Shown here: positions 34,223-35,293 of the stretch, piece after piece
Layout: each line of letters starts with the position of its first letter
Position numbering within the stretch: the first letter of the stretch is position 1
Source of the DNA: Chrysemys picta bellii
Lineage: Eukaryota
Assembly: GCF_011386835.1 (NCBI RefSeq)
Contig: NC_088802.1
Location: forward strand, 2,976,001-3,040,000
Reading direction: 5' to 3'
Length of the DNA stretch: 64,000 nucleotides
Program-made: the position numbers and the translations under genes
Notes under the pieces: model-generated
What the model was told of the DNA's origin: nothing
What the model saw: the letters and a program-made list of their open reading frames with translations, nothing else
Databases searched by the model: none

Positions 34223-35293
34223 GCAACAGTTTTCTCCGTTGGTTCCCGTCCCAGAGGAGAGTCGCACTTTGTGCCCCGAGCCCCCCCCCGCCCCCTGTCT
34301 TCCCACACCCTCAGCCCAGGGAGAGCTGGGCCCCTGCAGCCAGGGAGAGCTGGGCCCCGGCGCCCGCAGCCGAGTTGCAGAATTCACCCTCGCAGCACTC
34401 GTAGGAGGTGCTGTAGGTGATGCCCGCGAAGGACGAGGTGTCGTTGGTGTGGCATTTCCCCTTGTCAACGCAGTTCTTCTTCATGATCAGCTTGTGGCCG
34501 GCTAGCGGGAGAGAGCGAGAGGGAATGAGAGAAGGAGAAAGGAGAGAGAGAGAAAGAGAGAGAATAAGGGACGGGGACCGAGCGGGAGGGAGCCCCAGGG
34601 AGAGGGAAGGCAGCAGGAAGGGGGAAGGAGCCCGGAGACGCGGGCAGGGGGCTGTTACCTGCGCGGCCCCGGATGATAGCGCAGAGCTGGTCGTCCTTGC
34701 AGGTGACGGTGGTGGTGTGGCAGGAGATGCCAAATACAGTGAAGTCACATTTCAGGCACTGCAGGGCCGCTCCTGGGAACAGAGAGCAGGGGTGAGACTA
34801 ACCGGACCCCACCGACCCTCCCTCAGCCGGGCAATGGAGGTCTGCACCCCCAGGGGGTCCGAACGGGCAGCTAGGTCTGCCCCCAGCCCCATGACAGCGC
34901 CCCCTGGAGGGAGCCCCAGGGAATGAGGTGGGGAGCTGGGACTCAGGCAGGGAGGTCTGGGGGGGCAGGAGGAGTTGGGGGGGCTGGGGTTCAGGTGGGG
35001 GAATGAGGGCCCATGAGTCAGGTTAAGGGTGGGTCAGGGGTTAAGGGGATGGGGGTGAGGCTGGGGGACTGAGAGAAGGGGGGTCGGGGTGAGAGTGTGG
35101 GGAAATGGGGTGGGGTTTAGGGGCTGGGGGTGAGGCTGGGGGCTGAAGGGAGGGGCTCAGGCCAGGGGCTGGGCATGGAGCGATGGGGATGGGTCGAGGG
35201 CTGAGGGTGTGGGAAGACAGGGGGCAGGGCGGGGGCTCGGGGCACAAAGTGCGACTCTCCTCTGGGACGGGAACCAACGGAGAAAACTGTTGC
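34223..35293. repeat. ~95-bp inverted repeat pair (34223-34317 / 35198-35293)
   Basis: The two arms are near-identical apart from a C-run and bracket Ly6-A exons 2-3. Confidence 0.92.

What the first reader, a model, noticed from the sequence alone, without database searches (positions are those of the whole stretch)
34223..35293. Ly6-A's GPI signal was cut off by an inverted copy of its own intron, which supplies the stop codon
Seen: after CCEGEFCN the frame runs SAAGAGAQLSLAAGAQLSLG*. It contains a 24-bp tandem duplication (ccagggagagctgggcccc at 34316 and 34340), and the TGA at 34311-34313 falls inside a 95-bp segment that is the inverted near-identical copy of intron 1 (35198-35293). The copy resembles Ly6-A's own intron more than the homologous Ly6-B intron (42721-42790). 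Established: short tandem duplication plus a local templated inversion is the signature of replication template switching, and a GPI signal needs a terminal hydrophobic stretch, which is missing here. Inference: conversion to a secreted or poorly anchored protein. The inverted arms bracketing exons 2-3 could also pair in the pre-mRNA and affect splicing.
Basis: partly seen in the sequence, partly recalled or inferred. Interest (0 to 1): 0.72.

Follow-up and report, generated by a model that had tools for sequence, protein, structure and literature searches.

The report
Intron copy truncates turtle Ly6 gene
In the painted turtle, one of several copies of a small SPACA4/Bouncer-like (Ly6 family) gene has had the end of its membrane-anchor signal replaced by a backwards copy of part of its own intron. 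This creates an early stop codon; the change is real and specific to this lineage, but it affects one redundant gene copy and its effect on the protein is untested.

Summary
Window 34216-34317 is an inverted copy (96% over 103 bp) of intron-1 segment 35198-35299 of the same minus-strand Ly6/uPAR gene. The TGA at 34311-34313 lies inside it, and a 24-bp tandem duplication adjoins it.

The window is Chrysemys picta bellii. The 118-aa product is RefSeq XP_065420178.1 ("SPACA4-like").

Orthologues in Malaclemys, Emys and Terrapene are 132 aa. They carry the same 24-bp duplication and an intact hydrophobic tail, and they have no inverted copy. The insertion is specific to the Chrysemys lineage: 94 nt replace 13 nt, and the frame is preserved.

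Contigs from another individual and from a second labelled organism bridge the coding-side junction at single-copy depth, so this is not a misassembly.

The truncated tail is the only one of 34 turtle homologues lacking the conserved hydrophobic end (best 12-residue hydropathy 1.22 against 1.7-2.3). Loss or weakening of GPI anchoring is likely but remains an inference.

In the one RNA-like run examined, the strongly represented transcript comes from an intact sister gene 40 kb away. Evidence that gene A itself is expressed is weak. This is an ordinary kind of mutation, cleanly documented. The scan had already noted this same stretch.

The parts
36256..36307 (-). Gene A exon 1 coding part (ATG 36305-36307; 17 codons plus 1 base; signal peptide MDKTLLLCLAILTCAGI)
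   Evidence: Sequence read. Matches the N-terminus of P0017. GT donor at 36254-36255.
34773..36255 (-). Intron 1 of gene A
   Evidence: 96-98% identical to intron 1 of the Malaclemys, Emys, Terrapene and Trachemys genes.
35198..35299 (-). Source segment inside intron 1 (template of the inverted copy)
   Evidence: Present at 97-99% in intron 1 of four other emydid genomes and at 90% in paralogue B's intron.
34659..34772 (-). Exon 2 (first half of the LU domain). Codon 34723-34725 is TCC (Ser) where nearly all relatives have Pro.
   Evidence: The splice joint 34659|34501 was seen in the sister gene's RNA contig laid on this locus. Pro/Ser comparison.
34311..34501 (-). Exon 3 coding part (second half of the LU domain, CCEGEFCN motif, truncated 20-aa tail, TGA at 34311-34313)
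   Evidence: Pfam UPAR_LY6 scores 29.0 bits against a cut-off of 24.8 on P0017.
34316..34363 (.). 24-bp tandem duplication (two AQLSLAAG-type units). Old and shared with Malaclemys, Emys and Terrapene orthologues.
   Evidence: family D4. 132-aa orthologues with the duplicated octapeptide.
34222..34315 (.). Inserted inverted copy of the intron segment. 94 nt take the place of 13 nt in the Malaclemys orthologue. The BLAST match runs 34216-34317 because of short homology at both joints.
   Evidence: Coding-side junction bridged by independent contigs X4 record 18 (34256-34416, 0 differences) and X6 record 26.
34190..34221 (-). Stranded remnant of the original tail (..MLGAWLARGL) and the original TAA stop (34190-34192). 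It is still in frame with the upstream ORF.
   Evidence: Identical codons end the sister gene and all orthologues.
42713..42779 (-). Homologous segment in intron 1 of paralogue B (not the template)
   Evidence: 89.9% over 69 bp, against 96% for gene A's own intron.

Best explanation
Gene A is one of a cluster of turtle Ly6/uPAR genes that NCBI names SPACA4-like or Bouncer-like.

What happened to the DNA:
- In the ancestor of emydid turtles its GPI-signal region gained a 24-bp tandem duplication.
- Later, in the Chrysemys lineage only, 13 nt inside the signal's hydrophobic part were replaced by a 94-nt reverse-complement copy of a segment lying about 880 bp upstream, in intron 1 of the same gene.
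- The copy carries a TGA in frame, so the precursor ends after 20 tail residues instead of 34 and loses the conserved hydrophobic end (..AAGLAMLGAWLARGL).

Inferred mechanism: a single switch-and-return of the nascent strand to a nearby template of opposite polarity (four-point template-switch model; FoSTeS/MMBIR type), with 2-3 nt of homology at each joint.

Inferred consequence: the stop lies in the last exon, so nonsense-mediated decay should not apply and the protein would be made. It is unlikely to be processed efficiently by GPI transamidase. It would then be released as a soluble LU protein or retained and degraded in the ER, which amounts to loss or change of function of this copy. The intact sister gene 40 kb away and the other paralogues would carry the ancestral role.
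For: Structure of the locus:
- Inverted repeat and duplication.
- The window is identical to Chrysemys picta bellii CM062329.1, and the product equals XP_065420178.1.

Comparison with relatives:
- Orthologues with the same signal peptide in Malaclemys, Emys and Terrapene are 132 aa, with the duplication and an intact tail.
- None of these loci has an inverted copy of the intron segment.
- The Malaclemys alignment breaks exactly at 34316/34221, with 13 nt in place of 94.
- 124-aa forms without the duplication occur in all non-emydid turtles.

Independent DNA:
- Contigs from a second individual (X4) and another labelled organism (X6) carry the arm/exon junction at single-copy depth.

Tail hydropathy:
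- 33 relatives score 1.7-2.3 (best 12-residue window); this product scores 1.22.

Precedents from the literature:
- Zebrafish Bouncer without its C-terminal anchor does not rescue fertility (10.1101/354688).
- PrP lacking 7 residues of its GPI signal is degraded by ERAD (PMC12410294).
- The four-point template-switch model (PMC5453318).
Against: - No GPI predictor or assay was run. The remaining tail still has small residues at a possible omega site and a 12-residue, weakly hydrophobic stretch, so some anchoring cannot be excluded.
- The UTR-side junction (34221/34222) is covered only by an RNA-run contig reaching 20 nt into the arm. That is below the tool's 31-nt bridging rule.
- Microhomology of 2-3 nt is close to what chance gives, so the repair or replication mechanism is not settled.
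- The arms differ at 3-4 positions, mostly in a C/G run and a CpG, so the age of the insertion is poorly constrained.
- Expression of gene A itself is barely supported. There is only a 233-nt 3'UTR contig at depth 6.7, and no A-type exon 1 or exon 2 contig in the one RNA-like run.
Confidence: 0.75

Rival explanations
1. Gene A in Chrysemys is a silent or decaying copy. Under this reading the insertion is a neutral lesion in a gene already redundant with its sister, and no protein of consequence is made.
For: - In the RNA-like run X15 the spliced contig at depth 151 is the sister gene. Its 30-nt overhang matches L003 exactly.
- Gene A shows only a 3'UTR contig at depth 6.7, next to an intron contig at 3.4, and nothing over exon 1.
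- Ser replaces a Pro conserved in nearly all relatives.
- In organism C a 1-nt insertion at 34280 puts the remnant tail out of frame.
Against: - The ATG, both donors, both acceptors and all ten cysteines are intact.
- Against Malaclemys, exons 2-3 differ at 6 nucleotides, only one of which changes an amino acid.
- RefSeq models the gene.
- Only one run, of unknown tissue, was examined, and contigs drop rare variants.
Confidence: 0.3
2. The shortened tail still works as a weak GPI signal, so the protein stays membrane-anchored and little has changed.
For: - Small residues N-S-A-A-G follow the last cysteine.
- A 12-residue Leu/Ala/Gly-rich stretch remains.
- The tail is 20 residues long, within the range of known GPI signals (own knowledge).
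Against: - Its best 12- and 15-residue hydropathy (1.22 and 0.99) lies well below all 33 relatives (at least 1.70 and 1.64), and a Gln interrupts it.
- The lost 15 residues are almost invariant across turtles from Pelodiscus to Emydura, which argues that they matter.
- Removing 7 residues of the PrP signal was enough to cause ERAD (PMC12410294).
Confidence: 0.15
3. One reading: a single replication template-switching event produced both the 24-bp tandem duplication and the inverted copy.
For: The two features are adjacent (34316-34363 and 34222-34315), and both are templated from local sequence.
Against: Malaclemys, Emys and Terrapene orthologues have exactly the same duplication without the inverted copy. 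The duplication therefore predates the insertion by the depth of the family Emydidae.
Confidence: 0.03
4. Assembly artefact: the inverted copy is a misjoin in the reference assembly.
For: Short-read contigs break at the arm boundaries, and none listed bridges 34221/34222 by 31 nt.
Against: - Contigs from an independent sample of the same species (X4 record 18, 34256-34416, 0 differences, depth 14.6 against single-copy 17.6) span the arm/duplication/exon junction. So does one from another labelled organism (X6 record 26, depth 9.3 against 9.35).
- X15 record 12 runs from the 3'UTR 20 nt into the arm.
Confidence: 0.03

Closest known systems
SPACA4 / Bouncer (Ly6/uPAR fertilisation factors; Herberg et al. 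2018, 10.1101/354688; Fujihara et al. 2021, PMC8488580)
   Same: - Single LU domain with ten cysteines and a signal peptide.
- In all relatives, a C-terminal GPI-type signal.
- NCBI names the turtle homologues SPACA4-like or Bouncer-like.
   Different: - This copy ends before the hydrophobic part of the signal.
- Subfamily membership rests on automated names only. I made no tree against mouse SPACA4 or fish Bouncer, and expression in the germline was not tested.
- Turtles have several tandem and inverted paralogues rather than one gene.
Naturally secreted LU proteins (SLURP-type; here paralogue B of the same cluster)
   Same: LU domain with no membrane anchor. Paralogue B stops directly after the CN motif, and does so in Malaclemys too.
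   Different: B lost its tail by a point difference (TAG where A has TCG), and the stop is conserved between genera. A keeps 20 tail residues and lost the rest through a templated insertion in one lineage.
Template-switch mutations, four-point model (Loytynoja and Goldman 2017, PMC5453318); FoSTeS/MMBIR
   Same: A stretch of the ancestral sequence is replaced by the reverse complement of a nearby stretch in one step. This creates a long inverted repeat able to form an RNA stem.
   Different: The template lies about 880 bp away and the copy is 94 nt, which is longer-range and larger than the short events that model was built for. Microhomology is only 2-3 nt, so end-joining with templated synthesis cannot be excluded.
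Truncated GPI-attachment signals (PrP lacking 7 C-terminal signal residues, PMC12410294)
   Same: Partial loss of the hydrophobic end of a GPI signal, with the omega region kept.
   Different: That outcome (ER retention, ERAD, tenfold lower protein) was shown by experiment. Here it is only an expectation, and release as a soluble protein is equally possible.

Membership tests
Ly6/uPAR (LU, three-finger) domain proteins | LU domain profile match above the curated threshold | tested here: met
   P0017, which is identical to the window's product, scores PF00021 29.0 bits against a cut-off of 24.8. Single exons alone score below threshold.
Ly6/uPAR (LU, three-finger) domain proteins | Ten cysteines with a C-terminal CCxxxxCN motif, and an N-terminal signal peptide | tested here: met
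   Translations of exons 2 and 3 show 10 Cys and CCEGEFCN. Exon 1 encodes a short hydrophobic leader. The leader was judged by eye, not with a predictor.
GPI-anchored proteins | C-terminal hydrophobic stretch after a short spacer | tested here: not met
   Best 12-residue and 15-residue Kyte-Doolittle means are 1.22 and 0.99, against 1.70-2.31 and 1.64-2.16 in 33 relatives. This is a crude measure, not a trained predictor.
GPI-anchored proteins | Small residues at the omega, omega+1 and omega+2 positions | tested here: met
   N-S-A-A-G-A-G follows the last cysteine, unchanged from the relatives.
GPI-anchored proteins | Release by PI-PLC or detergent-phase partitioning | not testable with these tools
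   Needs expression in cells.
SPACA4/Bouncer subfamily | Groups with SPACA4/Bouncer rather than other LU proteins in a tree; germline-restricted expression | not tested
   Only the source names of the turtle homologues are available. The PDB sequence search found nothing. The tissue of the RNA-like run is unknown.
Template-switch (four-point) mutation | The derived segment is the reverse complement of a nearby ancestral segment and replaces ancestral bases in one block | tested here: met
   94 nt at 96% reverse-complementary to intron 1 replace 13 nt present in Malaclemys. The flanks align on both sides.
Template-switch (four-point) mutation | The ancestral state is established by outgroups | tested here: met
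   Malaclemys, Emys and Terrapene orthologues and the sister gene lack the copy, and all have the intron template.
Template-switch (four-point) mutation | Microhomology at the switch points | tested here: inconclusive
   GG(C) at the coding-side joint and CA at the UTR-side joint. That is 2-3 nt, up to 5 if the lost ancestral codon was GCT. This is near chance.

The most novel reading that the evidence does not exclude
The insertion is frame-preserving (+81 nt) and contains a single in-frame stop. The A of that UGA sits inside a predicted ~100-bp near-perfect RNA duplex with the intron arm (-234 kcal/mol, A paired with U).

If intron 1 is still present when the 3' arm is transcribed, ADAR could edit UGA to UGG, as at the hepatitis delta amber/W site. 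Alternatively, the stop could be read through. Either would restore the old hydrophobic end behind a 27-residue insert. One gene would then produce both a soluble and an anchored LU protein, with the ratio set by RNA editing.
Probability: 0.03. Interest if true: 0.75.

Novelty: new member of a known kind. Interest (0 to 1): 0.33.

Why it matters
It is a cleanly polarised natural example of a templated inversion-insertion. Template, ancestral target, derived state and outgroups are all in hand. The event changes a protein's C-terminal targeting signal and, as a by-product, creates a 100-bp RNA stem.

The gene belongs to the group annotated as SPACA4/Bouncer-like, where membrane tethering was shown to be required in zebrafish. 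A lineage that truncates the anchor signal in one paralogue, beside a conserved natively secreted paralogue (B), offers a small natural test of what soluble forms of these proteins do.

It does not open a long-standing question. The product is already in RefSeq, the gene has an intact sister nearby, and its expression is uncertain.

Tried and rejected
- Paralogue B as a guide to the ancestral 3' end: homology between A and B stops about 40 nt after the CN codons, so it was uninformative.
- The "skip form" in reads as an allele of gene A: rejected.
  - It sits at full single-copy depth beside the window form in X4 and X6.
  - Its 3'UTR is only 86% like the window.
  - Its overhang matches the sister locus L003 exactly.
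- An interspersed repeat inserted twice in opposite orientation: rejected because depth over both arms is single-copy. By contrast, 33363-33725 is covered about 100,000-fold.
- A cryptic splice that removes the stop and restores the tail: rejected. The only GT dinucleotides upstream of the TGA in exon 3 lie inside the CCEGEFCN codons.
- Dating the insertion from the differences between the arms: the variable sites lie in a C-run that is homoplastic among species, plus one CpG, so they are not informative.
- Other searches:
  - The PDB sequence search gave nothing.
  - Pfam on single exons was below threshold.
  - A word search of the scan's earlier findings added nothing new.
- Homologue search: it needed the stop-free stretch 34314-34751 as the query, scored on the exon part only, because a 62-aa query cannot see 118-132-aa relatives.

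Full report
**Gene structure.**
- The region holds a three-exon gene on the minus strand. Exon 1 has its ATG at 36305-36307 and its donor after 36256. Exon 2 is 34772-34659. Exon 3 runs from 34501 to the TGA at 34313-34311.
- I did not build or submit the joined spliced model. Exons were searched one at a time by reference, and full-length comparisons used database protein ids returned by the tools.
- The joined product is nevertheless known. P0017, a 118-aa RefSeq protein of Chrysemys picta bellii (XP_065420178.1, "sperm acrosome membrane-associated protein 4-like"), has exactly the exon translations read here. The locus fetched for it is identical to window 31311-39307.
- P0017 passes the Pfam UPAR_LY6 threshold (29.0 against 24.8 bits).
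- The window therefore comes from the painted turtle. It holds a cluster of LU-domain genes: A here, B at about 41062-44662 on the same strand, and at least one further LU exon near 59392-59466 on the + strand.

**The observation.**
- The repeat finder and BLAST both show that 34216-34317 is the reverse complement of 35198-35299 (96% over 103 bp, one gap). The next best matches in the window, apart from the B intron, are 14-mers.
- The B-intron homologue (42713-42779) is 90% identical over 69 bp.
- The 24-bp tandem duplication (34316-34337 and 34340-34361) is real.
- The TGA lies inside the arm.
- Depth over both arms in four public runs is at single-copy level, whereas a true interspersed repeat at 33363-33725 is covered about 100,000-fold. 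The arms are therefore not two insertions of a mobile element.

**Reads.** I laid contigs of four runs on 33000-36600.
- A second sample of the same labelled organism (X4 record 18, 34256-34416, no differences, depth 14.6 against about 17.6 for single-copy flanks) spans the arm/duplication/exon junction. So does another labelled organism (X6 record 26, depth 9.3 against 9.35).
- The UTR-side junction is covered only by X15 record 12 (34010-34241), which reaches 20 nt into the arm. The short-read contigs break at the repeat boundaries.
- All four runs also hold a second form, in which 34222-34331 (110 nt) is replaced by 5 nt. This is not an allele:
  - it sits at full single-copy depth beside the window form;
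  - it carries fixed differences (34368, 34386, 34725);
  - its 3'UTR is 86% like the window;
  - its 30-nt overhang matches exactly the locus of P0018 (L003).
- P0018 is a sister gene on the opposite strand, about 40 kb away on the same chromosome and just outside the window.
- In the RNA-like run X15 this sister gene gives a spliced 1364-nt contig at depth 151. Gene A gives only the 3'UTR contig at depth 6.7, and nothing over exon 1 or the A-specific base of exon 2.

**Relatives.** Exon 3 was searched through a stop-free reference, so that relatives of 118-132 aa fell within the tool's length limits. This found only turtle proteins.
- Nearly all are 124 aa and end in an almost invariant tail (SAAGAGAQLSLAAGLAMLGAWLARGL), from Pelodiscus and Emydura to sea turtles.
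- Proteins with gene A's own signal peptide in Malaclemys (P0001), Emys (P0034) and Terrapene (P0010) are 132 aa. They have the octapeptide duplicated and then the same intact hydrophobic end.
- At the DNA level, Malaclemys aligns with the window at 96% down to 34316 and again from 34221. It has 13 nt (CAGCAGGGCTGGC) where the window has 94 nt. Emys and Terrapene are the same.
- The intron template is present at 97-99% in intron 1 of all four other emydid loci, and none has an inverted copy.

This settles the polarity and order of events:
- The intron is the source and the 3' copy is derived.
- The duplication is ancestral to Emydidae.
- The insertion arose later, on the Chrysemys branch.

**Anatomy of the event.**
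- Net change is +81 nt, so the frame is kept. The original last eleven codons and the TAA (34190-34192) still follow in frame. The TGA is the only stop in between.
- The joints share GG(C) and CA with the template. That is 2-3 nt, hardly above chance.
- Replacing an ancestral block with the reverse complement of a nearby block is exactly what the four-point template-switch model describes (PMC5453318). However, the template here is about 880 bp away and the copy is unusually long. I regard the replication-based mechanism as the best inference, not as shown.
- The arms differ at a CpG next to the joint and at two sites in a C-run that also varies homoplastically among species, so the age cannot be read from them.
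- Presence at single-copy depth in two further samples suggests that the insertion is fixed or common.

**Consequence for the protein.**
- The stop is in the last exon, so nonsense-mediated decay should not apply (established knowledge).
- The tail is cut from 34 to 20 residues. Its best 12- and 15-residue Kyte-Doolittle means are 1.22 and 0.99. The 33 relatives range from 1.70 to 2.31 and from 1.64 to 2.16. This product is the only outlier.
- The omega-region residues are unchanged.
- By analogy, the product should be poorly processed and then either released or degraded. Secreted Bouncer lacking its anchor failed to rescue zebrafish fertility (10.1101/354688). PrP lacking seven signal residues was retained in the ER and degraded (PMC12410294).
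- This remains an inference. No GPI predictor or assay was available, and weak anchoring is possible.
- Signs bearing on decay are mixed. A Ser replaces a nearly invariant Pro (34723-34725). Otherwise the ORF and splice sites are intact, and only one of six exon differences from Malaclemys changes an amino acid.

**RNA pairing.**
- The two arms are predicted to form a duplex of -234 kcal/mol, against -83 +/- 7.5 for shuffled partners. They pair with each other in the minimum-energy fold of the 1.1-kb pre-mRNA segment, and the UGA is fully paired.
- Exon 3 is terminal and there is no usable donor before the stop, so an effect on exon choice is unlikely.
- The speculative reading is that the duplex recruits ADAR and recodes UGA to UGG, restoring the in-frame old tail. 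Three points count against it:
  - the 5' neighbour of the A is G, which ADAR disfavours (own knowledge);
  - no T>C at 34311 was listed;
  - organism C has an extra base in the arm's C-run (34280) that puts the remnant out of frame.

**Verdict.**
- The single-event claim is refuted.
- The functional outcome is plausible but untested.
- The kind of mutation and the kind of protein change are both known. This is a well-resolved new instance in one redundant paralogue of one turtle lineage.

Noticed in passing
window 41062-41067; L001 about 1003-1029: Paralogue B ends with TAG directly after the CN codons, where A has TCG. The same stop is present in the Malaclemys orthologue, so this natively secreted LU protein is conserved between genera rather than a recent lesion.
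   Followed up: partly
L004 (Trachemys scripta elegans, VIRI01000027.1), 980-5229 and 5548-10035: The Trachemys gene (P0033) is a hybrid. Its upstream region, exon 1 and intron 1 are collinear with gene A. From about exon 2 through more than 4 kb of downstream flank it is collinear with the Chrysemys sister gene. The two genes are inverted paralogues 40 kb apart, so this looks like an inversion by recombination between them, or else an assembly join.
   Followed up: partly
window 34659-34772 and 34320-34501 against L003, L005, L007: Exons 2-3 of gene A and its sister are 96-98% identical within Chrysemys, while their introns barely align. Emys and Terrapene A exons differ from Chrysemys A by 4-13%, although their introns differ by only 3-4%. 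This suggests exon-limited gene conversion between the inverted paralogues, fast protein evolution, or both.
   Followed up: partly
window 33363-33725: A very high-copy interspersed repeat, covered about 100,000-fold in DNA runs, with many contig breaks. It lies just downstream of gene A.
   Followed up: no
window 41300-41860: Intron 2 of paralogue B holds a long tandem array of C/T-rich units of roughly 60 nt. The corresponding intron of gene A is only 157 nt.
   Followed up: no
window 59392-59466 (+ strand): Another LU-domain last exon (CCETDLCN motif followed by small residues) on the opposite strand. It is a further member of the cluster.
   Followed up: no
window 33942; L001 8270-12029: Malaclemys has about 3.7 kb between the 3'UTR of gene A and the next collinear block that is absent from the window. 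This is an insertion there or a deletion here.
   Followed up: no
window 36600-37000: Repeated blocks of GT/GA microsatellite with a roughly 170-nt period lie upstream of gene A's promoter region. They are also repeated in the Malaclemys and Trachemys loci.
   Followed up: no
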